Shown here: in pieces, positions 1-45,203 of the stretch
How positions within the stretch are numbered: the first letter of the stretch is position 1
How the letters are laid out: every line of letters begins with the position of its first letter
Assembly: GCA_976226885.1 (NCBI GenBank)
Contig: OZ320316.1
Location: forward strand, 31,620,001-31,684,000
Source: Iphione sp. A-MEVVRFRX5
Lineage: Eukaryota
Reading direction: 5' to 3'
Length of the DNA: 64,000 nucleotides
The notes under the pieces: model-generated
What the model was told of the DNA's origin: nothing
The model's database searches: none
The model's input: only the letters and a program-made list of their open reading frames with translations
Program-made: the position numbers and the translations under genes

Positions 1-782
1 CGCTGTATACACATAGTATAAAACCCGTCACCTTTTGTCCTAGGTAGGAAGTTGTCCTCTGATATTCAAAGTCTAATAGTTCATCCTCGACCAAGAAGTT
101 CGGGCCGGACTGGACTTTGTATTGCTTGAATTAAAACCAGTATGCTGGCGCCTTTCTCAAAGATGTCCTGTCCATGATTGCCACAATATTGTGTTTAGGA
201 TGTACTGACCAAGAGTGCACCCTGATCTGCACCTACTACAATATATGTATATATATATTGAAACGTTTCTACTTGACGTGGGAATACACAATATGAGTGG
301 TTAGTAAACACTGCCACGTGTTGCAAGTAGCCATTTTGTCCAGTATGGACCCCTGCATACACATAATTGCCCATAATTTCACGATAACTATGCGGCTAAG
401 TACCGATGTAATAAGCAGGTTGTATAGCCTGCTGTGTGTACCATATTCGTGTGCCTTCCCTGAATGTCCCTTGTGCACACCTTGTTTGTATGTATTTATA
501 GATAGGCATTAGTGCAGATTCTGTCCCAGTCGGCGTTTATGTGTGCTCTGTTTGATGAACTAGTATAAATATGTAATAAATGTGTTATGCGTGCCCCCTA
601 CCATGCCATTCTTTCCTTCTCTCCTTGTTTCTGTCTCTCCTCATCCTTTTTGCCTATTTTGTTTTCATTCTCATTGTTTGTCTCCTTTCTCTCTCCTTTC
701 TATATTTCATTTTCTTCCCCCCTCCCTCCCTTCCTGACCTACACCCCCCCCCCCCCCGCTGTTTCCAGTTCGCGCGGGTCAG

Positions 783-1417
783 GTTGCCATGGAGACAACC
801 ACCGCTCGACGATCCATCACCCTACGGAGGGGTGGTTGGTGGGAGAGTATCGTGGCGGGGGGGGGGGGCGACAATAGATGACAAGTTGATCACGTGATGT
901 GATTAGTGGGTATTACTAGGGAGGGCGAGCAGTGAGGGAGGGACGGTTTGGTGAGGATCTATGTTAGAGGTGGTTTGTGAATTTACCCTGTCCCTGTTTT
1001 TCCCCATTTTTGTCACCGTTACAATTTCCTAATTCTTGGTGTTTCCTTTTGTTTGGCTGTCACTCTTGTGTGTACATTGTACATGTCACTCTTTCAAACT
1101 TTTCATCTCAGCCCCTAGCATCCAAGTGCAGTTTCAGGGGTAGCAAAAACATGTATATATATTCATGTATATGTGAATCGGTTTGTATGTATTAGTGTAA
1201 CTGAATGCAATGTGTGTGTCTGTACAACACATTGGGTACGTAGGTTGTTTGTATCTGTGTGTCCCATAGTGGCCGGTGCTTACTAGTCGACAGCGTCCCT
1301 TGTTACCATGGCTACTGTCCCCCTCCCTGCTTATTACCATGGCGACGCCCCCAACGCCCACCTCGTTAGGGCTCCTTGTCGATCAAACTGGAAGCGTTGC
1401 TCGGTTGCTATGGTGAC
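783..1417. promoter_or_regulatory. RFX X-box-like palindrome cluster 1
   Basis: GTTGCCATGGAGAC 783, GTTACCATGGCTAC 1302, ATTACCATGGCGAC 1333, GTTGCTATGGTGAC 1404; X-box consensus is GTTNCCATGGNAAC. Confidence 0.6.
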
Positions 1418-1549
1418 CGCTCGGTGGTTGTTGTTGGTGAGGAGTGGAGAGGAAAAGTGGTTCAGTGGTTAGATCACTGGTCGTTTACCCCAAGGGTACA
1501 GTGATTCATGACTCGTTTCGCTGTGGTATCTCCTACGTATCTGATCTAA

Positions 1550-1645
1550 GGCCCACTTTCCATGTGTACGGGCTTTTTCTCCGGACCACGGAGCCTGGAC
1601 TTCTCCGTTTACGCAAAACGAATCCGTACACATGGAAAGCGGGCC
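1550..1645. mobile_element. 96-bp Harbinger/Tourist-type MITE
   Basis: 22-bp TIR GGCCC(A/G)CTTTCCATGTGTACGG with 1 mismatch; flanked by TAA and TCA; TIR related to the elements at 31466 and 49134. Confidence 0.75.
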
Positions 1646-3179
1646 TCAGGTGTCTCTACTGCCTCCACTGGTGCGGGAAAGCTAGATCGTACTGACGGAC
1701 CACACAGTTAGCAGTCAAATTTGATTCTGTATTTTGTAAATATTTACATGCCAAAGCACAAAAGTATGCAAAATTATACTCGCAGCCCTTCCTTTCTCCC
1801 TAATCCACTTGTTCTCTACGCATGACAGGACATATATGTATATAGATGTATATGTCTAGTGATTGATGGTCGTATGACTAGGCAGTACCACCTCTCCCCT
1901 CCCAGCCAGGAGGTGCCACGGCGCCTGTTGGCATGTCAACACGCACATGACCGGGCCGCCAGCACAGGTAAGGGGGGCGGAGCGGAGGGATGGGAGGGAG
2001 TGTAGAGGTAGGCTTACACAGGACACCAGGCTTTTAACCCAGGGTAACGTCCAGCAAACCATTTACTACATTGGATGTTCATGATGTATGTGCATGCATA
2101 GAGTTATGGGGACGAAGACAGGTGGAGAAGAAAACATTTTCATCCTGTGTTCTTGTATAGATGTATGTATGTATTTGTGTGTGCGCGTGAGGGGGGGAGT
2201 GGTGGGTGCAGAGAGAAGGAGAAAGAGAGAGAGAGACAGAGAGACAGACAGACAGACGGACGGACGGACGGACGGACGAACGACCATAGAGAGACAGGGA
2301 AACACATAAATTGACCACAGCCCCATGCGACTGATGTCACGGTATCCGCCTCATTGTGGTGATCAGGTGTAGCAAACCTGATCCCCTCTGTTTCACAGCT
2401 GGTCACGCCGTGTTTTCCATGTAAGCCTGTTTCGTTACGGTTCCGGTTACTGGATTTGCATTCCTCACTTGGCTCGAACCTGTCCAGGCACTAAACACAC
2501 ACTGTCTCTCTCGCTCTCTCGCTCTCTTCCGTCTTTCGCTCTCCCCGCACATCTCGTATCCCTCTCTTTCGTTTGCTGTCCGATTGTCCCCCCCCCCCCC
2601 CCAAGCTTGAGTGAATGAGTCGACATGGTAAATTGCTTTCAAGCCCCTCGAGCGAATTATCATACCAGCAGGCTGCCCCGACCAGGTGAGTTCTCCCAAC
2701 ACATACCTCGCTAATCCAGGTAAACCCAGGGTAATCCAACCTGGTGTCGGGGATTAAACCACTTCAGCGAAAGGATTAATTCATGATATGGGATCACATA
2801 ATGTGGTGCGTATGGGAGGGAAATATGCACACGTAGGGAAGGTATGCATGTTCCCAAGCACGTATTCATAATAAAGGCAGCAGTTTTTTGTATTAGTTCG
2901 TCTATCACTACACAGCCCCGCCCCCCGTAACCAAACCTGTGGCGGTTCCGAATAAAGTGCATGGCAACCATTGGGTAACCTCCACCGGAACATTTCTTGC
3001 CTAGAAATTCTGCTCTCGCCTCTCCCTCTGTCTGTTTGTCTGTCTCTTTCTTTCTCTCACATCTTCAGTATACATACATGTACATGTATATACATTCGAA
3101 CATCACATACACCTCAGACCTAACGAGGAGTGCGTGCCTGTGTGGTGGTGGTGGTGGGATATGGGGTGTGAGCCAGGTG

Positions 3180-5275
3180 GTTACCATGGCGCCCATCAGA
3201 CAGCGGGGTTTCAGGTGTCCCCCAGTGTACGTTCAACCACGCGAGGGGGAACATACGATGGTATGCCCCTTCCCGCCATAACAAGTGCTCCCCGGCGCCT
3301 CCTCTCTGGAAAGGACATCCCCCATCCCTCAAATACACACACGTTCCTACCGTACCCCCACCTGGGGTCAGTCGTCGTCATGGTTACGGCTTGGGTCACG
3401 TGACAGGGCGCCGTGTTGCCAGCAGACGGCGTGTGAGGTTACCATGGTAACCAGGGAAAGTAGTACGGTAATGAGACTTTCGAAGTCAAGTGAAGCTAAG
3501 TAATGCATACCGGTACGTATCACATACAAGGTGTGCCCTTATACACATATATATATGTCTCCTACCACCCATTGCCCTTATATATACAGATATGTGTACC
3601 TAAAGTGGTTTAAGGGATCTTATTTAACGGAATTATCTAGCATATACTAGTGGTTAACAGTGTATATAATTCCCTCAACCCCCCCCCCCCCTTGGCCGCA
3701 ATAGTTCGGCTTGCGATCAGGTTGTTCGCTGATCGGGACCCCTTACCAAAGCTACATGTATTCTTCAACCAGAGGAAACTTCCATTCCTTCGACATGTTT
3801 ACTTCTCACTAAACATACTCTCTAAGCGTTCCCTTCATCTCCATAGTTCATATATACATAGTTCATATATATTTCTCTTCAGTGGGTCTGCTTCGTCTCC
3901 GTAATGCCACGGTGTCCAGCGCAACTCTCCCTTCTTCTTCTCCTTGTAGTTTCCCACCACCTCGACGCTGTCATCTTCCTCCATCATAGAGGAATACCAC
4001 CTATCCATCATTTTTCTAGATTCCTTCTCGTATTTCTTTTTTTCCATCTTGCTGTCCGTCCTTCCCTCATCATCACTGTGACCTCTACATCCTTGGCTTT
4101 GCCTATCTACCTATTTGTCTACCATCTATTTATTTCTCCATCCTCATTGGATGCTTCCTACTAATCTCAGTCCATGTATCTCCCACTATCATACACCTCT
4201 CCACAACTGACCAGTATTAAGTGGCCTGTCGCACAAACCCCCTCCCACTTCATTGTCTACGTGTAGGGGTATGTCTCATTGTAAATATACTCCCTCAGCC
4301 CCACCACCACTTTGTCATAATGCCCTATTGTCCGTTCCCGCTGGCCTCCTGCCCCCTCTGATGTAACTGTGACGTCATCGTGACGTAAGCGCAAGTGCCC
4401 CCGTGGTCAATCCCTCTAGTGGCGGTGGAAGGAGGGAGGGGGGGCCCGGATCCGTTGCCATGGTGACCTATTGTTATTGATCGGGAGGCACGAAACCTGG
4501 TGTCATAACTATGGACTGGGGACTGACTGCTGGGGCGTCAAGAGGAGGAGGAGAAGGAGTGTGTATATGCAGTGTGCGTAGGTTTGTTTGTGAGTTTGTG
4601 CGTGTGTATCTGGGGAAACCGACAACGATTGATGATCTCTGGACGTTCGAACGTGAACATGTATATTCGGAGACTTGGGAAGAAAAGACTGGCCTGGGTA
4701 TGGGCGATCGGGAAGACTTGTGGGGGGGGGGCATAGTTACGTTGGCAAAAGAAGAAAGCAAGAAGAATGCATTTGTATGCAAATGTGTACATAAACTTTG
4801 TTCATCTATAATGCATGAAATGTATATGGTGAATATACATGCAAGGAGCATTAGCAGGGCACAAGAATGGTGTAATTCTGCAGTGATTATCAGGAAACGT
4901 GAAATAGGCATTGATTTCATGATGTTTCTCTGTAGTAAGTCACGTTTCGTTTTGGTTATTTAATAGTAGAGAAATATAAGATGTCTTTGTCTCCTCTTTG
5001 ATTCACAGACCATCGGCAAGGGGTCGCTGTGGTGCATTGACCCGGACTACCGACCCAACCTGCTGCAGGCGCTGAGAAAGACGCCCTACCACCCCTATCA
5101 TCAGCTTCAGATGCTGGCCACGCCCACCCCGAACGCTGGCTACACCATTCTCTCTGGGTGAGTAGATTACTTGTCCTGACCAAACACCTACGTCCAATAC
5201 TAGTGTTGTCATCGTGTTATCTAGTGAGGTTCCTAGCGCCATGCTAGGACATTACAACTCACACACCCACACACA

Positions 5276-5308
<33 letters not shown>

Positions 5309-5790
5309 AGGGAGACCGAGCTATATTCGGAGATGCTGAAGATAAGAACGCCAGAGCAGCAAAAGTTAATGGTGCCACTGCATGGATGGGAATAGTAGTA
5401 GCCAACTAGAAGGTGAGATGAGAGGAACTTTTTCCACTCTCCTTGTGTTGATTCGATATCAAGGATTTTGTAATATCGCTGGCTGTGTTCGATCGCGACA
5501 CATTATCAAGGTTTTCTCGCCCTCCGGTCTCAGTCCAGGGGCTGCATAAGAGTAAGGAGAGATGTTACGGGTGGAAAAGAAAATATATGAACTAATATCA
5601 AGATGGAGCCAACATTTTAAAGAGTAGAGGGAAACAGATCAGAAACCGGAGATTCCTGAAGAGAACTACAGTGAGTCTCACTATTGATAATCACCACCAA
5701 CACTATCCGGGCACTCCGTAACCATGGAAACGCGTGGTGTGACCCTGGACGTGACCCCTCACGCCCCAGGATGGGGACTACCATGGGAAC
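3180..5790. promoter_or_regulatory. RFX X-box-like palindrome cluster 2
   Basis: GTTACCATGGCGCC 3180, GTCGTCATGGTTAC 3374, perfect palindrome GTTACCATGGTAAC 3438, GTTGCCATGGTGAC 4454, GTAACCATGGAAAC 5718, weaker ACTACCATGGGAAC 5777. Confidence 0.6.
5009..5157 (+). CDS. FoxN2/3: FoxN2/3 forkhead transcription factor, internal exon (end of the forkhead domain)
   Basis: Acceptor ttcacAG|, donor |GTgagt. Translates [29 protein letters not shown], closely matching the recalled FOXN2/FOXN3 segment [28 protein letters not shown]. Upstream forkhead exon not found in the window. Confidence 0.95.
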
Positions 5791-6821
5791 GGGGAGGACG
5801 TGCATACATAACAGGTTTAGTAGTTAATGCAAACATCTAAGTTTAAGGCGTAGCTGACAGAGAACCTACCTCCCGATCCCTCTCTATCTCAATCTTTCTC
5901 TCTCTATCTTTCTGTCTGCCTGAAAATGAGCATTTTGTCATGTAAGGGAGATGGTCTTGTAGGTACCCTTCCCTGGTCCATCTTGAGGCAGAGGTTTAAG
6001 GTGGCAAGGTGGTTTAGATCGGCAGACAGATGGGATAGAACGACAGTAAAGGGGAGATACGCAGGCCGGTTTGGTGGTAGACGTTGACACGTCTCCCCTC
6101 GCCGCTCGGTGTGTGCACACAGCTCACCCAACTCTCCGTGACGTCACACTAACCTGACGTCACCCAACTTGGCACATCGGCCCAGATGATTTTTAAGGTG
6201 GGGGGAGGAAGGAGACAGAGAAAACGTGTAAACATAGAGACAGAGTGAAGAGAGTATGATAGATAGAGAAGGGAGAGGCACTAAGACCGGCGGCACTATT
6301 TATGATAATTTTTAAAAAATCAGAATCAGCAATAAAAAGTCGCACGTCCGAAGCTGTGTGTGTCGGGGGGGTGGGGATGGCGAAGAGGTCGGCCCGCACG
6401 GCTGACGACACAAAGGCCAATACGTTCACTCCATGTAGGTCATGATTGTACAACACTCGCCACTACCACCACTACCACCACCACTACCACCGCCGACACC
6501 ACCCTGTCCTCTGAACATGGAAAGACACCACAGGACAGGCTGACTACTCCGAGATGACGGCACGAGTAGAGGACGGGGAAGAGTCACTTTATTCAGAGAG
6601 ATGTTCTGATGTGTGGCGGGGCATTCACAGTAAGAATCAGCGGTGGTAGGACAGCATGTACAGTTGCTTTGTGTAGAGACAGGCGTGGATGTGGGTTTTG
6701 TCCTGTTCCTCGATCAGTATGAGGTACTCTGTCCGTTCGTCTGTCTGCCTGTCCATTCTTCTCCGTTTCCCTGACTTTGGTCATTTTGCGTGCCACCTCA
6801 TCTCACGGCGTTCCCACAAGC

Positions 6822-7654
6822 GTCACCAAGGCAACGCGTCGCTATGGTGACGGCGCATGCGCCGATGCCACAAACAGCCGCCATTGCTGTCGTTGCTATG
6901 GTGATGGTTCCCTATTCGCTCACCAGATGGCAATGGTGAGCGGTCGTGGCGACAGTTTCTATGGCAACCACCACGCCCGGCGCATGAATACCGGCCGTTT
7001 GTATGTGCGCTGCATGTTTTGTTTCTATTCACAAAAAAGGACCGCTATGTTGTGACAAACTGGCCATCTGCAATGATCAAAAGGACAGGTTAAAACAACG
7101 TAGGTGGATTATTTTTGCACTATTGTTCCGTTTGTATAACTACGTCTGACCCATATGTATGTGTGTGAGCGTGATCTAAATGGTAGTGGCAAGTGGGAGT
7201 GGTGGGTGGCATAGGCGCTGGTGCTTGCAACAGACCGTGAATAGACGACAGACTAAGAGTAGGTCACGGATGAGAGACGATGTCACCACAGGCTGAAATG
7301 TGAGGTTAGTGGACCACAAAAGTACAACGGTAAACATGACTCTTCCCCACATTCTAAGTGGGACGCGAAGCTATGTAAGAGATGGACAGAATGTCAGAGA
7401 GACTAGTAACAAGTGTGTGTTAAAGACAAAAGAAAACAAGGGAAAGGGTGAAGGCCATGCGGATGAAATCAGAGAAAGACAGGAAGAGAGAGTGACAAAA
7501 ATCGAGACGAAGAGATCCACTCGCCCCCTCCCCTCGCCAGTGGCGGGCCTTTGTCAGTCGGTGTTTGTCTCGGCTAGAGCAGCGGTAGGGAATTCTCGCA
7601 CGGTGGCGCTCCTCGCTCTCCTAGCCTGACCTTAATACACGTCACTATGGTAAC
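6822..7654. promoter_or_regulatory. RFX X-box-like palindrome cluster 3
   Basis: GTCACCAAGGCAAC 6822, GTCGCTATGGTGAC 6838, GTTGCTATGGTGAT 6892, GTTTCTATGGCAAC 6955, GTCACTATGGTAAC 7641. Confidence 0.6.
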
Positions 7655-7703
7655 GGGACAGCTAGCGTCAGGACAAGTCTCCTACTACCGGCCCTACCTC
7701 TCC

Positions 7704-8037
7704 NNNNNNNNNNNNNNNNNNNNNNNNNNNNNNNNNNNNNNNNNNNNNNNNNNNNNNNNNNNNNNNNNNNNNNNNNNNNNNNNNNNNNNNNNNNNNNNNN
7801 NNNNNNNNNNNNNNNNNNNNNNNNNNNNNNNNNNNNNNNNNNNNNNNNNNNNNNNNNNNNNNNNNNNNNNNNNNNNNNNNNNNNNNNNNNNNNNNNNNNN
7901 NNNNNNNNNNNNNNNNNNNNNNNNNNNNNNNNNNNNNNNNNNNNNNNNNNNNNNNNNNNNNNNNNNNNNNNNNNNNNNNNNNNNNNNNNNNNNNNNNNNN
8001 NNNNNNNNNNNNNNNNNNNNNNNNNNNNNNNNNNNNN
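7704..8037. other. Assembly gap (N run)
   Basis: 334 N. Confidence 1.
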
Positions 8038-11000
8038 ATACCCATAGACAATGTTGAAGAACTTGTCACTCGGCAGTGTGTAGGTATGGACGATGTGGCG
8101 CTTAGTGGCAGGTGTGCCATTAGTAACTTACTCGACACACACCGACCAGGCCGGCTAAGCTTGCCTGTCAGTTTGTGCACCAGTAGTAACGTAGTTGTAT
8201 CACTACATCTACTACTCTTTGACTACACACGGCATATAGACAAACTGACCACAACGAAGTCACTGTCTGCTTATGTCGGTGTGCCGCTGAAGCCCCCGTT
8301 TTTATGGTGAGGGGCTAGTGGCCCAAACTTACTTCACTGCACCAGTCTACATGCAGTTCTATTATTAAACTATCATCATATCCGGCCTGGGCCAACATGG
8401 AGAAGCCTGCCCGCACACTCTGCTTGTATTAAAGACACTAGTATGGCTGTGCTTGTGGCCTTTCTGCAGGAGTTACTGCTCACTTAATCTTGATCTCCTA
8501 GTATGGCTGTGTATGGTCGTAAATTTACGAAGGTTTTATACACATATGGTTGGTGTCTCAACAGCTGCGTATGCCGGAATGGTCATAGAATCAGGCTTAT
8601 ACATATTTACCTCCATGGGTGGGGTTTTATAACACTCGTAATGGCAATCTTTTTAAAGACATCCCTGTATGATCATCAATATTGATGTATGCATTTACAT
8701 TTGTCTGCGTCTGTTGCCAGCTGAAATGTACCGAATTAGAGCGATTTTGTAACGAGCTGCACTTTGCAGTCTTTAAAAAAAATATCAATGAATTACAGCC
8801 CCATTCTGTACAAAGTGCTTTATCGAATAGCATGAAACAAGCAGATCAACATACGTTTTTCAAGTTTTAACAAATGATATAAACGTACCGGCATATCATT
8901 ATGTGAGTGATGGGTCTTGCCGAAGCTTTTTGTGTGTCAATTTAAATTGCAGCGTGCAAATTAGTCGTTGACTTTAAGCGAGTCCTTCCGTGTATGCATT
9001 TAGCTCTTACGTGTGCGCTTAGCCACAACCTCCCCGAAAAATCCAATTCATATCAATGCCCGGGCCGCTTATTAACACAGATGGATGTGTGATATGATTG
9101 CACAAGCAGAATGTGTGATATGTTGATTTCAACCACCATCAGTTGCCAACCTTGCCCCAGGGATTGTTGCATCTATTGCAGTATTGCATGTATATGGGTA
9201 TACCTTGACGCAGCCAACTCTGTAAGTACAGGAATTTGGGAAGACAGCAGACATCAAAAGGATAAATGCGTACATGTACATCAAAAGACCGCCAAACCTT
9301 GGATATCATGTACAGTGTCCGGTTTGTCAGGTGACAGGATCACGGTTACATATTCTAGTCCGCGAGGCGATGCTAAAAGATAGTAGTAGCCCTAGGTGAA
9401 ATTAACCCTTCTGTCCAGCGGGGAGCAACTACTATTACACTTTATACCGAAAACATAACATGAAAGTCGTCTAAAGCACAATGGCAGACCCTTCATGGAG
9501 TTATATTTTTCATACCGGGTCGCAAAGAAAATAGTTTGGAGACTCAATTTGTACTCAACCACGCTACTAATTACAATATACGTGTCCTTTAAATTATCTA
9601 GAAATGTCTTTGGATTAGGAAAGAAAACAAACTTGGCACTACTTTCTTAACAAACTGCCTTATCAATACATAAATGTGTATATCAGTGGAGGCTGCTGCC
9701 ATCTGGTGTTGGAGAAATGTTCTTGAATTGAGGGATTCCTTCCTTTCATGGACATCACATCTTCTGGATGACAAGGAGAGGGAAAAAAGAGAGACGAAGA
9801 GGGCGGTGAGAGAAGTGTGAAGGAAGAAAAGAATGGCAGAGGGGAACGAAAGGGATAGATCGAGTGGACAGAAACAGAGACAGAAGCGATCTGATTCCTC
9901 GGGTTATAACTATATTTAAGCGCAATAAACAGCTGTGCTTTAGAAACGCCAGATTAAGTTCATCGTCTAATCATATACATGCACGTTTATCGATTGCCGA
10001 GTCATATTTAGAGAGTTATTGTGGAACAGTGTCAGTGTGTCTGTACTGCTTCATAACAGCTTCGGTTAGATAGTAGGACACCATAGAATGGCTTGGGCAA
10101 TCTTTTAGAATTACTGTAATACGATATGTACAAGGATACAAAGTTAATATATTGCTCGATAATGCATATGCAGATCGGTTCCACGATGTCAAAACGCATC
10201 GTGTTTCGAGTGTCTCTTTCCCACACTTGTTTGCAGATATACAATTATATATGCAGAGATGCACACAACGCACTGTGGAGGGACAGTTACCGGGCCATTT
10301 GTTCATAAAGGTATGAGTGTGTGATTACAATCACATACCTTTAGGACCACAGTGCGGTTAGCCCTCTGTAAACGGACATGACCAAGCAATTTTTGGTCAG
10401 ATTAGCGGGGAATTAAGTCGAAGCAGGTTGGGGAGAGCGGTGAAGGAAGGAGGAGCATACGCACTGTACCAGGTTTCCAGGGTAGGGGATGAGGTCCTCG
10501 GGTGGGGGTGAGGGGAGTAAGCAGTGTAAGGAAGACAACATTTAACTGTACGTTTAATTGTTCTCATCAAATCTGAGAAGGAAGCAGTGGTAGGTCGAGA
10601 GGTGAAAAAGATTCAAGCAGCGTGAAATACGGCTTGTAAAAACCAGCTGTAACCGGTTATTGTCGAAGGGGCAGTACAGGACTAGGAAGACTGAGGACAG
10701 ACCTTTGGGTGGGGAGAAAACGGTGAGATGGTTAACGGCAGTGAAAAAAGAAACACGATGGTGGATATTCGAACACAAAAAAAGAGCTTTGGCAGAGGAA
10801 GCCGGTTGTAGTGGCGTACAGGTGCGGGTCTATAGGGTGGTAAGAACGTGGTTACTTGGAGATTTAAAGGAGGAGGTGGTTGAGTGGATGTGGATAGTGC
10901 AGGAAAGGACGCATTTGAGGCAAAAGGAGGAGTAGGAAGGGATACTTGTGTAGGAAGCAATGTATGGGGCTCTTGTTTTGAGAAGTGTAAAGTGGCGTTC

Positions 11001-11224
11001 TAGGGAACAGATGGGTGGGAATTTTAAGGATAGCAGAAGGAGTAGTGGTGGATAGGGAGGTAGAGGTACAGAGGAAAGGATGGAGGTGGGACTGCGTGTA
11101 GCGGGGGTAGGTGGTTTGCGGATGTACCGGGTGTGTGTTGGGCGTCTGATGGCGTCACGTGATCTATTGATGTGAGCCTCGTTATGATGGCTGCCGCTTC
11201 CTCCTTCTGCTCCTGCCGGGGTAC

Positions 11225-11290
11225 GTTACCATGACGACGACGGCCGCCTCCCCACTCACTAATTCTGCCACCCTCCGTCGTCATGACAAC
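11225..11290. promoter_or_regulatory. Paired X-box-like sites in a GC-rich intronic element
   Basis: GTTACCATGACGAC 11225 and GTCGTCATGACAAC 11277; a further site GTTGTCATGGAAAC lies at 14862. Confidence 0.5.
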
Positions 11291-12296
11291 CTGCTGCTGC
11301 CCACCACCACATTTGACGAAGTCTCGGCAAAGTCTCACGGAGGCGGCGAGAGCCGGACGAGAGGAGCCCTACCATCGTGGAAGCGGCAGGCGCGAGAAGC
11401 TCTCGCTGGGGGAGGGGCTAAAGACTTTCTGTTAGATTGTCATGGGAGAAAGGGAGGAGGGGAAAATAGATACATGCCCCACCCTAACCAGGGCATTACC
11501 ATAACCGGCATAGTGCTCATCACTTTATGTGTGTGCTCTAAGCTAGATGACTATAAGACGGCTTTTACATGTATCTGTATGTTATGTATGATAGGGATTC
11601 CCACAATGCTTTCCTATGGAGAAACATCCGTTTGCATGATAAGCCATCCTGGTCGGGAACAGGGAAACAGAATATGATGTATTAGCATTGTGAATGGAGG
11701 CACACGAAAGAGCTAATGGATATACTATATATAGGCTGTTTTGCACGCTCCAAAATATGTCCGTTTGCATTGCAAACGGGCACATGAGCCCTGCCTAAGA
11801 GGGAATCGATGGTCCATGGCCCTTGCTAACTTGGGTTGGTTTTCTTCAGCAGTTGTTCTGAAATGATGGGTATGGATGCTTCCAGACCGGTGTGAATGAG
11901 GGCCTTTCCATGTGGATGTATTCAATATACATGTAATAGACAGTGATCGCTGGAGGTGACCTTTATGACTGAAATTAGTGTATCATGCATCCTGAATATG
12001 TATTTGTGTGTGGGAAAACCACTGATTGATTGACCAGTATTACAGAAAGCCAGCCGTATATTTTTAGACACATGGGTAGGGGACGTAGTAACTATGTATG
12101 AATTTCCCTGCATGTCATGGCTGCATATCTGTCGACAAAACTACATGTATGTTTGCATGGAAAGCCCACCTAACACGGACACCAATCCTGACATAATATA
12201 GCCTACCACACCATTGTTGTCAGTGCTTAACAGAATACTCTTCGTATCGTGGTGGGGAAAATATATACTGATGACTGTTTGTCTTGTATTTTGCAG

Positions 12297-12352
12297 TGCC
12301 GCAAAGCCTCTACCGCTGGGAAATCGTCTCAACCTGAATACGCCCTCTCCTC
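12297..12352 (+). CDS. FoxN2/3: FoxN2/3 internal exon (56 nt)
   Basis: ttttgcAG|...|GTaagt; phase 2 in, phase 1 out, fitting both neighbours; encodes AAKPLPLGNRLNLNTPSP. Confidence 0.85.
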
Positions 12353-12416
12353 GTAAGTACATATTTATCACTAATAAGGTACACTTGATCCAGTGTCACT
12401 GAGACCTACACATACA

Positions 12417-12650
12417 NNNNNNNNNNNNNNNNNNNNNNNNNNNNNNNNNNNNNNNNNNNNNNNNNNNNNNNNNNNNNNNNNNNNNNNNNNNNNNNNNNNN
12501 NNNNNNNNNNNNNNNNNNNNNNNNNNNNNNNNNNNNNNNNNNNNNNNNNNNNNNNNNNNNNNNNNNNNNNNNNNNNNNNNNNNNNNNNNNNNNNNNNNNN
12601 NNNNNNNNNNNNNNNNNNNNNNNNNNNNNNNNNNNNNNNNNNNNNNNNNN
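12417..12650. other. Assembly gap (N run)
   Basis: 234 N. Confidence 1.
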
Positions 12651-14507
12651 GGGAAGTATACATTGCAAGCTAAATAGATTTATGCAGTGGGGAAGACAGT
12701 GTTCTGTGTATTTATTGTGACGTGGTCCTGTGATAAACGGATTAGAATGTGTAGCCGAGACCCCTTCTCCTCTGGTCATGTGATATCACAGTTCAGATGA
12801 GAATCTCAAAATTTTCGATGCCAAGGCACATCTGTCCCATCTCAGAATTATTGATAATGTGTACTCATTACAGCAATCAAATCAAATACCCCATTATTGG
12901 CAGAGATTTATCCAGATATGAACATTTGTATGTAAAGGCGAAGCGCGCAGAGGGATGAATTAACAAGATGTTTATGTAGTAGATTTGGGCAGGAAAAAAC
13001 ATTTCTTTCAGTAAAATGTCGCAAAGACAAAGTAAAATGATCTATTAGAGATGCAGCGACAAGCTTTCTTATTGTCAGTATGTATTTTTCAATGCATTGG
13101 ATAGAAGATGCTCTCGTATTAAACGGACGACTAAACGGCCAAAAAGAGATAACAACTCCTGTAACATAGGACGTACCGCTATAGTACATCGGAGTTGCCC
13201 ATAATTTGTGGTCTGCCACAGGGATCCGTACTGAGATCCCCCTAGTAGTATATCGGGACCCCAGCTGGCACACCTGCGACACATGCTGGCCTCCTGCGTA
13301 CAATGATGGATGCCTGCCTCATGGGTATTGATTGGCTATTGACAGCGACATTTACATGATGGCTCGCTCATCCTACCATTGATTGCACCCCCTCGGAGAA
13401 GTATGTCAGTAGGACCGATGCTCTCGCTACCTCTCACCCGGGGCCTGTGTGTCCCGGCTCCGAGTACAAACATCATGTTTATTGATCGGCTACAGATGAA
13501 TGCGTTTAAATGATGTGGCTGTACATCACCCTCTAGTAAGGCTGGCCGTAGACTGTACGGAGCGTTTAGACAGGTACACGGCCACATTATTACAGTTTCT
13601 TAATTACATCGAGCACGTCACGAGAAACGGCCCAACGCTCAATCAGTCGTCGAGAGAATAGTGCGCTTAGAGGAGGCAACTGCAAGTGACAGTTCCTAAA
13701 CTATAACTTTGTGTAGAAATCTGGTGGTTATTTTGATTTGTTTGCTGGGCCCTGGCGGAATAAATAGGAACTTACAACATTCTAAAAACATACATATCAT
13801 ACATACATACATACATACATTGCCTAAAACATGTAGTAATACCCAGTGCATCGTATGAACTCATTATTGTAATGTTGATGTCCATGTCCAAATTATCAAC
13901 TTATATTTATTTATATTGATAATATTTTACCTGTTTACGTGTAAAGAGTGAAAGAATAGTACTGCCTCATGTGGTGATAAAAGTACATGGATGTGTAAAA
14001 ACGCCTAACTTAGCCATCTAACCCATCTAGCATAAATATAAATATACATATATACATATATATAGAGAGAGGTAATGGATATATAAATATATAGATAAAT
14101 GCCTTTTACCTAGCTAGGTGTTTATCCTGATTAATAGATCGTAAATAAAAGCATGCGTAAGTCATTTTGATAATGCTAGATTTCCATTGTCCTATTAATA
14201 CTAACGCATAGGGGAACCGTATTCGTTGTGGTTTTTCAAATCTGCCCTCACCGCCTATAGGTGCCGCAGGTGTGGGGCAGTGATATGAAGTATGTATGTG
14301 TGTTATCCAGTGCATTTGTGTAGATAAGATGTTCAGAACCGTGAGGTACATGTACTCTTTCACGTTCTGGTGAACGTTCTATATGTTTCTACTTGCTCCG
14401 TCTAACGGTAGTGACGTCTCTGGTAATGGGAATTTTTGGACGCACTAGCAGAGGAGGTACCTATTGCCGTGACATATTCTAACGTTTGTTTGTGTCTCTG
14501 CTTTCAG

Positions 14508-14558
14508 ATCTCTTCCCTTTCCTCAGCAAGCGTCTGGCCCAATCCAAGATTGACTCCG
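14508..14558 (+). CDS. FoxN2/3: FoxN2/3 internal exon (51 nt, phase 1-1)
   Basis: ctgctttcAG|...|GTaagt; encodes HLFPFLSKRLAQSKIDS in frame with flanking exons. Confidence 0.88.
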
Positions 14559-14689
14559 GTAAGTGCACGTTCTCTCTGTTTCTGTCTCAGTCTGTCTTGT
14601 CTTTCTGTTCGTCTGTGTGCCTCACACATTCTTCTCACAAATTCTCTCTCTATTATACGTGTTTTATTCTTAAGGTTCTTAGCGCTCGC

Positions 14690-14691
<2 letters not shown>

Positions 14692-14764
<73 letters not shown>
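14692..14764. repeat. (CT)n microsatellite
   Basis: Uninterrupted CT run. Confidence 0.98.
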
Positions 14765-14767
<3 letters not shown>

Positions 14768-16479
14768 CAAGCCCTTTTTTATTGAGAGAAAATCAATAAC
14801 ATTCTTGTCTGCATTTCGCTGTGGCTGATAGTTCCGATGTCACCCACCAGGGGTTCCATTGGTTGTCATGGAAACACACGCCAGCGTTTTGAACACAGTT
14901 AAAGCGTCGCACCCATTCACCTTCAGCCTCGGGTAAGGGGGGGGACTGCAAGAGGGTCATGGCTTACTATAGGGGGAAAGAGGCCATTCCATAGATGCAC
15001 AGCCTCTGTCTATTGTCTCTCTGTCTTTCTCCCTCTCCCTCACGGCCTGGTCTTCCTCTCAACCTCAGTACCGATCTCTACCTAGACACTCACTCCCGCC
15101 ACCATCTCTGTGAGACCATGTACAGGTAACTCTCGTAACGAATGCTCTGATAACCATGTCTTTGAAATGACGAGGTCATAGTTTACAGTACAAAAAACCG
15201 TAATTTAAAGTACCGGTAAGCTTCGTTAACGAAACGGTCCGTTGACTTCACTTCGTGAAGAGAGGTATACCTGCGTGGCTTTTATGTCTTTAGATGAGAT
15301 TCCATCGCATTATTCTCAAACTAACTAGCGCATGAAAGATTATCCAGTGTGGCCGTAAATTTTTGTTAATTGTATCGTAACTAAAAGTGTACCTGTTGTG
15401 AAAGCATTTCCTGTTGTAAAACCTACTCCAACTTCATGAAATTAATGTATACACATGTTGTATGCTCCCTAGCGTTCTTCAAGTGCTATTAAGGAGTGTA
15501 TTTCAATGCACATTATATGATTCTCCCTAAATCTTAACCATTCCTAGGTGTTGCATTGTGTTTCGCGGTGTTCCTGACCGTGCCCAGCGTAGCGAGGGAG
15601 CAGTTGATTTGGGTGTACTATGCTTTTTCTACGTTTGAATCATAATACGCTGGATAGATCTGTCCCAAAAAGTGCAATTAGTAGTCAGAGTCTAATGAGG
15701 CCAAGCCAACCAAAGATGCGCAGTGGATGACTTGAGCCAGGGAAGAAGGGAATAAAACCTCAGTAGAGCCTGTCCGCTAGGTTTGGCTGGAATTATGAGG
15801 TGGTTGGATTAGTGAAGGAAAAGCACACTTAGGCTGGATGTTTGGGTTGATCTTATTACTGAGGTGACCTTATCCCAAGATTCCATCATTGCTAGACAGT
15901 GAATAGCGTTTTCCAGAGGAACACTGGTAAGAGTACATGAATTACACAGTAGGGGACCACCCTAAATCTGCCACGCACTTTGACAAAACGTCGCCGGCCT
16001 CTCTAAGCTCTTAAATCCCCACCTCCCCTGCCATTGCATCATAGGACCCGTCCACAAGATATTGATACATAATGAGATAAACCAGTTGCTTATGCCGCTT
16101 AGGTGGTTGGGATTGTCCCTCTGACCAGTACACTTCCCGACTAGTTGTAAGTTCTTGATTGCCATAGGTGTCTGTCTGTGTGTGTCGGTCCTTGAGGATA
16201 TTACATGTATATATTTAGACTTCACTGCGGGTGAGTGTGGGAGGATTGTGGAGGAAGGGCCACCTCCCAGCAACCCACCCCACTCCCCCCATCCTCACGC
16301 CTCTCCATCTTACCAGGTTAGTCCTCATTAAAGCCTCCCGACGGTCAGCCGGTCACGTGATTAGCAAGGCGGGCTCTAATTGGCCGGTGGTGCTGTCCTA
16401 ATGATGGCGGTGATATTTGCTGCTCTGCTCGTTTTGTTTGGTCGTTGCTCTCACTGTCCTCTCTTGTGTCTTGTTTTAG

Positions 16480-16533: not shown

Positions 16534-17152
16534 GTAAGTACCCGCACACACACACACACACGTGCTGCACACCAATAGGTAACGCTCAAAATAAAGACCC
16601 AATCAATCAAATGGGAAGCAGGTCACGGGAAGAACACAATTAGATACTAATGAACATTGCCACACACAATAAATATTTATTTCACTGCTTTCGGGAACTA
16701 TTGCATGACTTACATAGACATCTACGTGCGTGCACAACTAACGCACTCGCAGGCTCCCACCATTACTCGTTACTAGAACATGCACTCAGGGATATAGATA
16801 TTGAAATGTGAATTAACACATACACACACGCGCGTGTGTATTACAGGCATGCACACTGGCAGACTGGGAAACACATGATACTGTATACACACCCTCAGTC
16901 GTATGCATACAGTATGAAGTTCATGTGCTGCTATCACAGGAATAGTGACTTTCTTAACACTAAACACCTATGACTTGATGGGAAGAGCTCAGCGTTCCCT
17001 TTTGTTGCTGTCCCCCTTTCAAGATTTCCTATTCCCCCATCCATCTCTTGGTTTTCTTAGTCCCCCCCCTCTAGTCTTCACCATCTAGAAGTTACTCCTT
17101 CTTCCAAAACTCGGTGACCATTCTCTCTAACCTGGATCCTGTAATTTTGCAG

Positions 17153-17273
17153 AAGGCCGGCCGAGGTCCCTACAGTGTTCGAACGGTTGGTATGGCGGAG
17201 CGCGTTCACGGTCACCCTCACCTCCAGAGTTCGGCTCGGAACGAGAGAGGGAATTGCTGAAAGCCAAATACAG
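17153..17273 (+). CDS. FoxN2/3: FoxN2/3 internal exon (121 nt)
   Basis: aattttgcAG|...|GTgcgt; open frame QGRPRSLQCSNGWYGGARSRSPSPPEFGSERERELLKAKY; phases 1 and 2 fit the neighbours. Confidence 0.8.
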
Positions 17274-17626
17274 GTGCGTACTCATCTTTCGGTGTGCTCA
17301 CTCATATTGACATTTAGGACGGACAGGTCGGTAGTTTTTGTCACTACAGTGGTGATAAAATAAATTATCGCACCTCATAACGTGAATCTGCTTTATCTTT
17401 ATTATATGAGATCAACTGGCATGCCTGACTCCAAAAGTCTTGGAAACTGTGCACAGTTCACCCGGACCTACTCCGGTCGAGTTCAACACAGTATTTACAG
17501 TCTCACTAATGAAAGTTCATTCCTAGAGACCTTACTGTTGACTTAACTTGCACGTACATAGCATGTCTTTGGGTGCCGATGCAGTGCGACACCAAACTAT
17601 GATACTCTCATTACTTGCGTCAACAG

Positions 17627-18185
17627 GAGCCTGTACCGGCGTGACACCCCCGTGATCATCGTCTCCCACCCCAGCGAAGACCACACCTACAGTGCGGCGC
17701 GTCTCCCGCCCCTCACGTCGGCCTCGGACGTCGACGAGGAGTACGACTGGGGTTCCGACGAGGAGGACGCCGACTCCTTCAGCGACACGAGCGCCGCCGA
17801 CACCGACTTCTCGGACTGTGACAGTGACGGCGAAGGTCGGGTCAGCCCCGGGAAGCGGAAACGGCGCTCCTATGGCGGCGGAGGTGGCGCCGCCTACTCG
17901 GGCGTGGGCAGTCACCACGGTTACGGCCTGCCGCTCAAGAGGCGACTCATCGAGGCCGTCGACGAGGATGAAGAGATGAAGATCGTCGAGGGCGCAGACG
18001 CCTTGCTCAACCTGGCGGGTATCAAGACTTCCGGTGTGACGTCACTGCGCACGCGCAGTCCCGGGGGTGCCGCAAACAACAATAATAATAACAACAACAA
18101 CGACAAGAGTAGCAACAATAACAACAGTGCCAGTCCCAGCAGCAGTCAAGAGGCAGTGACATCAGAATCAACGCAGCGTTCCTAA
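17627..18185 (+). CDS. FoxN2/3: FoxN2/3 last coding exon
   Basis: caacAG| then PSEDHTYS, an acidic stretch and DEDEEMKIVEGADALLNLAGI, matching the recalled FOXN3 C-terminal motifs EDHNYS and EEMKEAAGSLLHLAGI. Stop TAA 18183-18185. The six exons total 990 nt with no frameshift. Confidence 0.93.
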
Positions 18186-36717: not shown

Positions 36718-36742
36718 ATGTTAGGTGTGGACCAGCTGCCAG
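36718..36742 (+). CDS. Homeobox gene, probable first coding segment (3' end of exon 36499-36742)
   Basis: Strong donor ccaG|GTgagt at 36742, phase 1, joining acceptor 38971 to give MLGVDQLPD-MADLVQ in frame. Acceptor cttcgtgtgcAG| at 36498. Translation could instead start at 38973. Confidence 0.5.
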
Positions 36743-37139
36743 GTGAGTGATCCTTTTACCAGTTATTATCTGTGTTTTCGTACACGGGTTAAAAAGAAGA
36801 CAGTCCCTCGCACCCCATTGCTTCAAGTGAGGAGCAGTATAGACTTGATATCAGGGGGATGAGTATAGTTTTCTTCAAGCTTATGCTAACGTTGGGAATG
36901 AGACACCAGAGCCGAAACGCGTCCCTCTAACTCAGCCAATGACCATAAAAATCCCGTATGAATAAAATGTTTCGAGGTAACCTGTGAATTGCTTTTAGTT
37001 GATATCTTTGTCGAAATGTTCCACTGGGTTTCCAGCAATCCCCCCTGTCTATTTAGATGCTAACACTTTCAACCCCTTTCAGTCACACCACATAAATTAA
37101 AGTAATTCCTATGGTGATAAAATACACACACATATATAT

Positions 37140-37497
37140 GGCCCCTCCCTCAAAAAAAAAGAAGGTGTGTTTCTGGTAATGACCAGCCAAAAACCTTGGT
37201 AGGGAGGGGGGGTATCTTTTTTTTAGATTTTTTTTTTTTCAGTTTCTTCCTTTGGTTTTGAATAATAAAGACAATATCAAGAATTTGAGTAATCTGTATA
37301 AGTTTTACAGTTTTTTGGTGAATTTTCATGAATTTTTTTGTTTTTCTACTCAATTTACCAAAAACATGTGCCGTGAAAACACATATCTAAGGAAATTCAG
37401 CCTTGGAAACTCTTTGGTCCAAAAATGTTTTAGGTTGGGTGAGGTTTTACTAGGTAGGGATGGGTTTCCAGAAACACACCTATTATTTTTGTTGGCC
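37140..37497. mobile_element. Harbinger-type MITE family A, copy 2 (opposite orientation, left end decayed)
   Basis: Shares internal blocks such as AAAACACATATCTAAGGAAATTCAGCCTTGGAAACTCTTTG with copy 3; right TIR CCAGAAACACACCTATTATTTTTGTTGGCC. Confidence 0.8.
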
Positions 37498-38732
37498 TAT
37501 TAATAATCTATGCTGCTGGTAGAAGCTAGCCAGGTAATACATGTACAAACAGTTTTGGCCCGCCCCCTCATTAATTTTGCCTAAAGAACAAAACCTGTGT
37601 AGGTTCCAGTTCCGTATCGGAAATTTAATTTAAACGCTAAATATTCATCACTTGTGTAAGGTTTGTAAGCCTCCCCATATACTACAATAACATCGTTCGA
37701 GGGTTTTCGGAGGATCACCCTCCCCCAAATATATGACAGCAAATAAAGAGGTCCGCTATATTAGAAGTGCGAGTCAAACTTCCTTATATGCATTGAAACG
37801 AAAATAATAATTTTGCAGATCACTTAGTTAAGGTGATTTGATGCATACATAGAGATAATAGATTTCCATTATAAAACAATTATATATATAAGAACATTGC
37901 ACAGATTGGCCCAATTTCGACAAATTCCCGCCCAAACCACACAAATTCGACAAATCTGACTGAAGCACCATTAATCTTTTATGCAAATTTCGTTCAACAA
38001 ATGCAAGGGGAATGCAAGTATTGAAACCGGCCGGAAGTGGGGATTTAGTAATTAAATGTATCCAAGTTAAAGATGAAGATATGGTCAGAGTTAGAAATCG
38101 TGATGGAAGTCTTGGTGTGCTGATTATTTTGTAGTAAACTTGCCGGCTCACGGATCGGTGCGTTTCATGGACAATGCGATTTGTGTGCTTTACGATGACC
38201 CTATTCTGATCATAAGTTGTCTTGCTACAGAAAAAACAGTTCACATGAACTGTCCTAGTGCTAACAATATATCAGTCAAACCTGTACTTGCTAAGAATGG
38301 GGACTTCCTGCTATTAGGTTCTCATGTAATCAGTCGACAACAAGAATACAACACTAGGCAAAATGCCTTAGCTCTGATACCCATGTGTGCATATGTAAAG
38401 GTAGCAGGTTAACTAGGCCCCTGGCTGACTGGGCATGTGCACATGGATATCAGCACCGTATAGATATATATTTAGATCAGCTTTTAACAAAAGTTTGGTT
38501 TGAAAAGACTGACACGAAAAGGACTATCTTTTTCATTTTTTTCAGATAGAAGACATTGTTCTCTTTTCAAAATAGTCCTTTTCTTCACGAGTTTGCTCCA
38601 CAATGGGTTAACATTATTGTCAGCACAGTGGGATGCAAAACCGACCATAGTCCTGCAAGAACTGATCAATGAATAAATCGTTTACGAGTAATGGAGAGGG
38701 TAATCTTATATATAAACATATACATGCATAGC

Positions 38733-38799
<67 letters not shown>
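38733..38799. repeat. (GA)n microsatellite
   Basis: GA run with one interruption. Confidence 0.97.
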
Positions 38800-38802
<3 letters not shown>

Positions 38803-38970
38803 TGGGGGGGGGGCAAGAGTGTCTAGAGAGAGGCAATCGGTCCTGCGCTATGAAGGTTTGTAGAGATTGTGTTGTTAAAAACTCCGTCCTTTCGACCACC
38901 GGCTGCAAGTCTGGGCACTCAAAGGCGCACGATGTTAATTTTTCTCATCATGCTCTTACCTCTTCTACAG

Positions 38971-45036: not shown

Positions 45037-45203
45037 TACCTCCGCCGCCCCCTCTGACCCCTCCGCCCGTCAAGGAGCGGTTCTCCTACACACGTTATCA
45101 GCTCGAGGTACTCAATGGGATCTACGAGGTGGTGCGCTACCCCAACTCCTCCCAGAAGCAGCTCATAGCTAAGAGGATAGGAATAACACGTGATCAGGTT
45201 AAG
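45037..45203 (+). CDS. Homeobox gene, homeodomain positions 1-46
   Basis: gccttgcAG|...AAG|GTgggt; PVKERFSYTRYQLEVLNGIYEVVRYPNSSQKQLIAKRIGITRDQVK has R5, L13, L16, Y25-P26 in homeodomain register. Confidence 0.93.

What the first reader, a model, noticed from the sequence alone, without database searches (positions are those of the whole stretch)
783..14875. About 18 RFX X-box-like palindromes in FoxN2/3 introns: a possible RFX-driven intragenic enhancer array
Seen: 14-bp near-palindromes of the form GT(T/C/A)N(C/T)(C/T)ATG(G/A)NNAC at 783, 1302, 1333, 1404, 3180, 3374, 3438 (perfect GTTACCATGGTAAC), 4454, 5718, 5777, 6822, 6838, 6892, 6955, 7641, 11225, 11277 and 14862. Their flanks are unrelated to each other, so they are not copies of one repeat. 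By eye only a few similar sites occur in the other 49 kb (26086, 47840, 54822). Known: this is the X-box bound by RFX dimers, master regulators of ciliary genes, acting with FoxJ1 and FoxN4 in multiciliated cells. Inference: this FoxN2/3 is under dense homotypic RFX control, which would tie it to a ciliogenesis or sensory-cell programme not normally attributed to FoxN2/3.
Basis: partly seen in the sequence, partly recalled or inferred. Interest (0 to 1): 0.72.

Follow-up and report, generated by a model that had tools for sequence, protein, structure and literature searches.

The report
RFX X-box array inside FoxN2/3 gene
The introns of an invertebrate FoxN2/3 gene hold about 50 times more RFX-type binding motifs than the genome average; the same gene is crowded with them in an annelid, a mollusc, a priapulid and echinoderm-like DNA, which fits the RFX-Foxn3 cilia-gene circuit recently shown in mouse.

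Summary
All 18 listed sites exist, 13 fit the stated pattern exactly, and the window has 24 strand matches against 0.87 in shuffles.

- **Excess:** near-consensus X-boxes (GTYRCCATGGYRAC, at most 1 mismatch) number 18 in the 27 kb of the gene. Shuffles give 0.04, and the genome-wide rate predicts 0.36 (0.13 per 10 kb), an excess of about 49-fold.
- **Not a repeat:** the sites lie in single-copy DNA.
- **Gene:** it is FoxN2/3. Its first coding exon lies 5.7 kb upstream of the window, and every listed site is intronic. The array starts near the presumed promoter at about -9.7 kb and stops before the last exons.
- **Conservation:** ten of eleven FoxN2/3 loci from other animals also exceed every shuffle. 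These include Capitella, Lottia, Priapulus and two echinoderm-like contigs. Intronic sites do not align between species.
- **Supporting parts:** the genome has RFX genes with dimerisation domains, and the encoded FoxN2/3 keeps the LXXLXWL RFX-docking motif.
- **Precedent:** mouse Foxn3 has Rfx3/Foxn3-bound intronic enhancers whose RFX site is needed for activation and self-repression, so the cilia link is no longer unattributed.

Binding was not testable because no sequencing runs were listed. The scan has noted X-box clusters at other loci of this genome.

The parts
783..796 (.). X-box GTTGCCATGGAGAC, intron 1 (the intron that splits the forkhead domain)
1302..1417 (.). tight cluster of three X-boxes (1302, 1333, 1404) in 116 bp, intron 1
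3180..3193 (.). X-box-like GTTACCATGGCGCC (1 mismatch), intron 1
3374..3451 (.). pair of X-boxes 64 bp apart (3374; perfect palindrome GTTACCATGGTAAC at 3438), intron 1
4454..4467 (.). X-box GTTGCCATGGTGAC (0 mismatches to GTYRCCATGGYRAC), intron 1
5009..5158 (+). FoxN2/3 exon encoding the end of the forkhead domain ([34 protein letters not shown]...), AG acceptor at 5007-5008, GTGAGT donor at 5159
5718..5790 (.). pair of X-box-like sites 59 bp apart (5718, 5777), intron 2
6822..6968 (.). tight cluster of four X-boxes (6822, 6838, 6892, 6955) in 147 bp, intron 2
7641..7654 (.). X-box GTCACTATGGTAAC, 50 bp before an assembly gap
7704..8037 (.). assembly gap (N x 334) inside intron 2; not filled, continuity untested
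   Evidence: no runs listed
11225..11290 (.). pair of X-boxes 52 bp apart (11225, 11277), both with CpG variants, intron 2
12417..12650 (.). assembly gap (N x 234) inside intron 2; not filled
14510..14560 (+). probable small FoxN2/3 exon (weak tblastn match to spliced orthologues P0056, P0088)
14862..14875 (.). last X-box of the array, GTTGTCATGGAAAC, intron 3
17143..17253 (+). probable FoxN2/3 exon (tblastn to P0079, E 3e-4); boundaries approximate
17622..18185 (+). last coding exon of FoxN2/3 with the conserved C-terminal motif EEMK..ALLNLAGI; start approximate, stop at 18183-18185

Best explanation
The palindromes are genuine X-boxes, the binding sites for dimeric RFX transcription factors. 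They form a homotypic array of roughly 30 sites across the FoxN2/3 transcription unit. The array runs from the presumed promoter, about 9.7 kb upstream of the window, through introns 1 to 3, and it contains tight sub-clusters of 2 to 4 sites within 150 bp or less.

The most likely function is to make FoxN2/3 transcription depend on RFX. The encoded FoxN2/3 keeps the LXXLXWL motif that docks mouse Foxn3 onto Rfx3 dimers. So the same sites probably also let FoxN2/3 return to its own gene and repress it. That would give an RFX-to-FoxN2/3 negative feedback limiting the RFX (ciliary or sensory) programme.

Selection seems to keep the number of sites rather than individual sites.

**Shown here:** motif identity, the excess, intronic position, single-copy context, recurrence at the orthologous gene in other phyla, presence of RFX genes, and conservation of the docking motif.

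**Inferred:** RFX occupancy, the sign of regulation, the feedback loop and the cell types involved.
For: **Motif identity**
- Over 58 half-sites the matrix is G54 T55 Y54 R52 C45 C51 A57, which reads GTYRCCA.

**Excess**
- The gene segment -10 kb to +18 kb has 18 sites at up to 1 mismatch against 0.04 in shuffles.
- The genome rate predicts 0.36 for the same span (15,523 sites in 1.18 Gb).
- There are none in the 45 kb downstream, which includes a homeobox gene.
- Random genome gave 3 in 200 kb.
- 300 scrambled palindromes of the same composition gave a mean of 0.04 and a maximum of 2.
- X-box halves are the top non-simple 8-mers in the gene.
- The flanks are single-copy.

**Orthologous loci, sites at up to 1 mismatch against shuffle expectation**
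- Capitella teleta: 10 against 0.02.
- Priapulus caudatus: 5 against 0.08.
- Two echinoderm-like contigs: 5 and 4 against about 0.01.
- Unnamed lophotrochozoan contigs: 8, 6, 5, 3 and 1.
- Lottia gigantea: 7 against 0.32 at up to 2 mismatches.
- Total: 48 sites in 269 kb, against 0.48 for scrambled controls.

**Alignable non-coding sequence**
- The only two non-coding blocks alignable with the nearest species are centred on X-boxes upstream of the coding region.

**Reader and partner proteins**
- The genome has at least 5 loci with an RFX DNA-binding domain and a BCD dimerisation domain.
- LTSLAWL, which fits LXXLXWL, is invariant across aligned FoxN2/3 and FOXN3.

**Mouse precedent**
- Two Foxn3 intronic enhancers are bound by Rfx3, Foxn3 and Foxn4.
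- Mutating the RFX site removes both activation and Foxn3 repression.
- Foxn3 mRNA rises in knockouts.
- Sources: bioRxiv 10.1101/2024.10.28.620684 and PMC12304973.
Against: - There is no binding, accessibility or expression evidence for this organism, because no sequencing runs were listed.
- Species-specific backgrounds for the orthologous loci are unknown. X-boxes are over-represented genome-wide here (3,686 perfect palindromes against 4 for the reversed control), so part of the excess elsewhere could be general.
- One orthologous locus (L032) shows no excess, and L027 is weak.
- Intronic sites are not positionally conserved.
- The forkhead motifs GACGC and GTAAACA are not enriched beside the X-boxes, unlike the mouse enhancer that was dissected.
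- The target gene is assumed from position alone.
Confidence: 0.6

Rival explanations
1. The X-boxes are bound by RFX but do not regulate FoxN2/3. They would serve a neighbouring gene, or act as architectural or looping sites or as a sink for RFX protein.
For: Target assignment rests on position only. In vertebrates, Rfx2 is reported to stabilise chromatin loops; this is cited within PMC12304973.
Against: The array tracks the FoxN2/3 transcription unit. It starts near the promoter and stops before the last exons. It is found with FoxN2/3 in ten other loci from several phyla, including the compact Capitella locus, where all 10 sites lie within the gene plus or minus 2.3 kb. In mouse, Foxn3 intronic RFX sites drive Foxn3-responsive reporters.
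Confidence: 0.12
2. The sites are read mainly by a different winged-helix protein. One candidate is the lophotrochozoan HP1BP3-like linker histone with an N-terminal RFX-type domain, noted elsewhere in this genome. Under this reading the array marks a chromatin state and does not serve as transcription-factor input.
For: Earlier scan note s1-329394 reports such a fusion protein in this genome. X-boxes are hugely over-represented genome-wide.
Against: This was not tested here. Full palindromes point to dimeric RFX factors, and the genome encodes these.
Confidence: 0.05
3. The excess is a by-product with no function. Possible sources are local base composition, palindrome-prone GC-rich DNA, CpG decay, or old copies of a mobile element.
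For: The sites sit in GC-rich patches (59% against 46% GC). Elsewhere in the genome some X-box-like matches lie in tandem repeats.
Against: Dinucleotide shuffles give 0.04, 300 scrambled palindromes give 0.04, and the reversed pattern gives 0. Flanks are unrelated and single-copy. The excess recurs at orthologous loci with GC from 30% to 49%.
Confidence: 0.03
4. The array is real RFX input, but it is ordinary. Any large regulatory locus in these genomes would carry similar X-box loads, so nothing is specific to FoxN2/3.
For: Other X-box clusters were noted in this genome, in a PDE1 gene and in other loci (s1-313917, s1-347303, s1-325246). Backgrounds in the other species were not measured.
Against: Density here is about 49 times the genome mean. 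The neighbouring homeobox gene and 45 kb of flank hold no site at up to 1 mismatch. Twenty random 10-kb pieces never held more than one pattern site. Ten of eleven independent FoxN2/3 loci exceed every shuffle.
Confidence: 0.15

Closest known systems
Mouse Foxn3 intronic enhancers bound by Rfx3, Foxn3 and Foxn4 (Zhang, Nair, Meng, Turner; bioRxiv 10.1101/2024.10.28.620684)
   Same: The gene is orthologous, the position is intronic, and an RFX dimer motif is the key element. The encoded protein keeps the LXXLXWL RFX-docking motif, so the same activation and self-repression logic is available.
   Different: The dissected mouse enhancer has a single RFX site together with forkhead motifs and E-boxes. 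Here there are about 30 X-boxes, with no enrichment of forkhead motifs beside them and no binding data.
Promoter X-boxes of ciliary genes (C. elegans DAF-19, Drosophila Rfx; consensus GTHNYYATRRNAAC, from my own knowledge)
   Same: It has the same 14-bp imperfect palindrome, made of two GTNRCC-type halves with a 2-bp spacer.
   Different: Classical X-boxes are single sites a short distance upstream of ciliary structural genes. Here they are many, intronic, and sit in a transcription-factor gene.
Homotypic clusters of transcription-factor binding sites in developmental enhancers (general concept, from my own knowledge)
   Same: There are several sites for one factor within 100-150 bp (1302-1417, 6822-6968). 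Site number is conserved while individual sites turn over.
   Different: The clustering extends over about 25 kb of one gene instead of a single module. I found no report of such clusters for RFX.
MDBP/RFX1 sites, where 5-methyl-C can stand in for T (from my own knowledge, not checked in a paper here)
   Same: Variation in the array is almost only Y/R. It includes CpG versions (GTCG....CGAC, ATGACG) of the TpG/CpA consensus.
   Different: Methylation state is unknown here, and the region has a relatively high CpG observed/expected ratio of 0.6-0.9.

Membership tests
X-box (RFX dimer binding site) | Imperfect palindrome of two GTNRCC / RGYAAC halves with a 1-3 bp spacer | tested here: met
   Over 58 half-sites the matrix reads GTYRCCA with an AT spacer. 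There are 18 sites within 1 mismatch of GTYRCCATGGYRAC.
X-box (RFX dimer binding site) | Occurs more often than chance or background | tested here: met
   Searches give 18 sites observed, against 0.04 in shuffles, 0.04 for scrambled palindromes and 0.36 predicted from the genome rate.
X-box (RFX dimer binding site) | The organism encodes RFX factors with a DNA-binding domain and a dimerisation domain | tested here: met
   PF02257 gives 9 matches and PF25340 gives 21 exon matches. They co-locate at C11, C17, C19, C26 and C10.
X-box (RFX dimer binding site) | Occupied by RFX protein in vivo or in vitro | not testable with these tools
   No sequencing runs were listed for this DNA.
Classical ciliary-gene promoter X-box | Single site close upstream of the start of a ciliary structural gene | tested here: not met
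   The sites are multiple, intronic and located in a transcription-factor gene.
Foxn3-type RFX-dependent intronic enhancer (mouse) | Lies in an intron of a FoxN2/3 or Foxn3 orthologue | tested here: met
   The best solved-structure match is FOXN3. Exons were mapped.
Foxn3-type RFX-dependent intronic enhancer (mouse) | The encoded Fox protein carries the LXXLXWL motif needed to associate with Rfx3 | tested here: met
   LTSLAWL is present. Columns L89, L92, W94 and L95 are invariant in 11 aligned sequences.
Foxn3-type RFX-dependent intronic enhancer (mouse) | Forkhead motifs (FKH, FHL-N) and E-boxes accompany the RFX site | tested here: not met
   Within 60 bp of the sites, GACGC occurs 5 times against about 3 expected, GTAAACA occurs once, and E-boxes are not enriched.
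Foxn3-type RFX-dependent intronic enhancer (mouse) | Bound by Rfx3 and Foxn3, with the RFX site required for reporter activity and repression | not testable with these tools
   This needs CUT&RUN and reporter assays.
Homotypic binding-site cluster | Three or more sites for one factor within a few hundred bp, conserved as a cluster | tested here: met
   There are three sites in 116 bp and four in 147 bp. The excess recurs at orthologous loci while flanks do not align.

The most novel reading that the evidence does not exclude
A turnover-tolerant array of X-boxes inside the FoxN2/3 gene is an ancient, bilaterian-wide device. RFX switches on FoxN2/3, and FoxN2/3 then docks on RFX dimers through its LXXLXWL motif. 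That docking shuts down both RFX targets and its own gene. FoxN2/3 would then be the conserved built-in brake of the ciliary or sensory gene programme, with site number setting the gain of the loop.
Probability: 0.35. Interest if true: 0.7.

Novelty: new member of a known kind. Interest (0 to 1): 0.5.

Why it matters
RFX and FoxJ1 are the known drivers of cilia genes, and a repressive arm through Foxn3 was described only in 2025, in mouse retina. The FoxN2/3 gene turns out to be packed with X-boxes in annelid, mollusc, priapulid and echinoderm-like genomes as well. This suggests the RFX-FoxN2/3 link is old and is wired into the gene's own introns. It gives invertebrate models, with Capitella as the compact case, a concrete set of elements to mutate. 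It also offers a clean example of selection on site number where individual sites are not kept.

Tried and rejected
- **Read evidence.** The search for public sequencing runs holding window 1201-7200 listed none. No ATAC, RNA or gap-continuity test was possible, and read laying was not used.
- **Wider background and Fox-gene controls.** I could not fetch more random pieces or the neighbourhoods of the other 35 forkhead hits.
- **Genome-wide count of close X-box pairs.** The pattern with a 1-30 bp gap found only about 15 loci. This was uninformative about larger clusters.
- **Repeat origin.** Rejected.
- **Rfam.** It found nothing in the window.
- **Long ORFs in the window.** They have no Pfam domains. 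ORF 11231-11677, which starts at the ATG of an X-box, has no support from spliced orthologues.
- **Forkhead or E-box co-motifs beside the X-boxes.** None found.
- **Site-by-site orthology of intronic X-boxes with four other loci.** None beyond the two upstream sites.
- **FoxN2/3-RFX complex prediction.** Left out. The only RFX dimerisation-domain DNA I could fetch is a broken, intron-less copy.
- **Literature.** Searches for RFX homotypic clusters or for FoxN2/3 with RFX in invertebrates found nothing relevant.
Full report
**Observation.** The window is G000:C10:31620001-31684000. Every one of the 18 listed 14-mers is present at its coordinate. Five (1333, 3180, 5777, 6822, 6892) miss it by one base. 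The pattern gives 24 strand matches (15 sites) in the window against 0.87 +/- 1.13 in dinucleotide shuffles, and 13 of the 15 lie before 15 kb. A tighter pattern, GTYRCCATGGYRAC with up to 2 mismatches, gives 22 matches against 2.48. Of the three 'outside' sites, 54822 is real, 47840 is a 2-mismatch site and 26086 is out of register; 50065 was overlooked. The two N runs (7704-8037, 12417-12650) are there and fall in an intron. I did not fill them and could not test continuity, since no runs were listed. Nothing below depends on them, except that densities are approximate.

**Not a repeat, not composition.**
- No direct-repeat family or tandem repeat underlies the sites, and the flanks are visibly unrelated.
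- A search of the whole genome with 700-7700 returns, besides itself, only short matches to simple-sequence tracts away from the sites.
- An unbiased 8-mer scan of the gene puts X-box halves (ATGGTAAC, CCATGGTA, ATGGCAAC) at the top once simple repeats are set aside.
- Three hundred palindromes made by scrambling the half-site GTYRCCA give on average 0.04 sites (maximum 2) where the X-box gives 18.

**The gene.**
- No forkhead signature lies in the window. A forkhead exon sits 5.7 kb upstream at C10:31614103-31614306.
- Its open frame (L005:3626-4360) best matches human FOXN3 among solved structures (5e-39, against 5e-25 for FOXN1).
- The forkhead domain is split after ...KEKGQ and resumes at window 5009-5158 ([14 protein letters not shown]...).
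- Spliced orthologues place further exons near 14510-14560, 17143-17253 and 17622-18185. The last of these carries the conserved EEMK..ALLNLAGI motif.
- All listed sites are therefore intronic: intron 1 runs from -5690 to 5008, intron 2 from 5159 to about 14509, and intron 3 follows.

**True extent.**
- With 50 kb of upstream sequence added, further pattern sites appear at -8403, -4418, -3284, -1769, -1367 and -751. Near-consensus sites lie at -9726, -9659 and -1215, and sparser ones reach out to -40 kb.
- From -10 kb to +18 kb there are 18 sites within 1 mismatch of GTYRCCATGGYRAC, against 0.04 in shuffles.
- From +19 kb to the window end there are none, although a homeobox gene lies there (note s1-334961).
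- The array sits in a GC-richer domain with relatively high CpG, from about -20 kb to +19 kb.

**Background.**
- The 1-mismatch pattern has 15,523 sites, or 0.13 per 10 kb.
- Twenty random 10-kb pieces held 4 pattern sites, never more than one each, and 3 sites of the 1-mismatch pattern.
- The gene's 6.6 sites per 10 kb is therefore about 49 times the genome mean. A Poisson expectation of 0.36 against 18 observed gives a probability of the order of 1e-24 (my arithmetic).
- X-boxes as such are strongly selected in this genome: 3,686 perfect GTTRCCATGGYAAC against 4 for the reversed control.
- Other readers noted clusters at a PDE1 gene and elsewhere. FoxN2/3 is therefore an extreme case and not the only one.

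**Other species.** A word search with the first coding exon found many FoxN2/3 first exons. I fetched the loci that lie on long contigs. Near-consensus X-boxes (up to 1 mismatch) against shuffle expectation are listed below.

| Locus | Species or source | Observed | Expected |
|---|---|---|---|
| L034 | Capitella teleta | 10 | 0.02 |
| L035 | Priapulus caudatus | 5 | 0.08 |
| L036 | echinoderm-like contig | 5 | 0.00 |
| L037 | echinoderm-like contig | 4 | 0.02 |
| L026 | unnamed relative | 8 | about 0.05 |
| L028 | unnamed relative | 6 | about 0.05 |
| L030 | unnamed relative | 5 | about 0.05 |
| L031 | unnamed relative | 3 | about 0.05 |
| L027 | unnamed relative | 1 | about 0.05 |
| L032 | unnamed relative | 0 | about 0.05 |

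- In Capitella all 10 sites fall within 6.4 kb, in and just around the gene.
- The echinoderm-like contigs encode proteins 62-67% identical to the Lytechinus protein.
- L029, a second copy from the same sample as L028, has 7 sites.
- Lottia gigantea (L033, 30% GC) has 7 sites at up to 2 mismatches against 0.32.
- In total there are 48 sites in 269 kb, against 0.48 for scrambled palindromes.
- The backgrounds of those genomes are unknown, which is the main caveat.
- Between this genome and the nearest locus (L026), the only alignable non-coding blocks are two upstream ones. Each is centred on an X-box: own -18671 and own -9659. The latter is followed by a perfectly conserved TAATGGCGTGATTATGGCGG.
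- Intronic sites do not align. The number of sites is kept while individual sites are not.

**Mechanism.**
- The half-site matrix is that of RFX dimer sites.
- The genome has at least five loci with both the RFX DNA-binding domain and the BCD dimerisation domain.
- In mouse retina, Foxn3 represses cilia genes and 81% of its bound regions overlap Rfx3.
- Foxn3 needs an LXXLXWL motif to associate with Rfx3.
- Two intronic enhancers of Foxn3 itself are bound by Rfx3, Foxn3 and Foxn4. Mutating the RFX site of one abolishes both activation and Foxn3 repression, and the authors suggest negative feedback (bioRxiv 10.1101/2024.10.28.620684).
- A second study reports raised Foxn3 RNA in the knockout and a Foxn3-Rfx3/7 axis (PMC12304973).
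- The protein encoded here has LTSLAWL at the corresponding place, and the motif is invariant in 11 aligned orthologues.
- I therefore read the array as RFX input to FoxN2/3 that also allows RFX-tethered self-repression.
- Against a simple copy of the mouse case, forkhead motifs and E-boxes are not enriched beside the X-boxes.
- Occupancy, the sign of regulation and the cell type remain inferred.

**Verdict.** The new elements are the density of the array and its recurrence at the same gene across phyla. I found no paper reporting either.

Noticed in passing
L005:341-395 (window coordinate about -9659 to -9605, upstream of the window): An X-box-like site, GTTGGCATGGCAAC, is followed by TAATGGCGTGATTATGGCGG. 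That 20-mer contains two ATGGCG (YY1-like) cores and is identical in the nearest other species (L026:7561-7602). It is probably the core promoter of FoxN2/3.
   Followed up: partly
G000:C1:1360147-1366381, and pairs at C1:2849051/2849326, 4363676/4363972 and 10422970/10423265: Some genome-wide X-box matches lie in a tandem array with alternating 154/203-bp spacing. Others come as pairs of perfect X-boxes 275-296 bp apart. These suggest a satellite and a dispersed element that carry X-boxes.
   Followed up: no
G000:C10:86596267-86599697 (loci L038-L041): This is an RFX-like copy with two tandem DNA-binding-domain pieces in one short ORF. Its dimerisation-domain matches are broken by stops and it seems to lack introns. 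It looks like a decaying processed copy.
   Followed up: partly
window 1302-1417, 3374-3451, 5718-5790, 6892-6968, 11225-11290: Neighbouring X-boxes are repeatedly 52-71 bp apart (71, 64, 59, 54, 63, 52; also 67 at -9726/-9659 and 52 in Capitella L034:8694/8746). This is a possible preferred spacing, but I did not test it statistically.
   Followed up: no
window 11231-11677 (+): A 148-aa ORF starts at the central ATG of the X-box at 11225, in a stretch with strong G-over-C skew. Spliced orthologues do not match it, so it is probably not coding.
   Followed up: partly
window 17911-17924: An X-box-like GTCACCACGGTTAC (2 mismatches) lies inside the last coding exon of FoxN2/3. It may be chance.
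   Followed up: no
window 36718-47791: The neighbouring homeobox gene, noted by another reader, has no X-box within 1 mismatch. It serves as an internal control that the excess is not general to developmental genes here.
   Followed up: partly
G000:C10:56701186-56701386 and C13:62516728-62516925: Two other forkhead hits break off at profile position 68, next to the FoxN2/3 split at position 69. They may be FoxN-class paralogues sharing the intron.
   Followed up: no
window 14692-14764: There is a perfect (CT)36 microsatellite about 100 bp before the last X-box. A complementary AG-rich tract lies at 2209-2282.
   Followed up: no
L026 and L037: Both contigs come from one ENA sample (ERZ26222911). 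They carry FoxN2/3 genes of very different lineages, one lophotrochozoan-like and one echinoderm-like, so that assembly mixes several animals.
   Followed up: no
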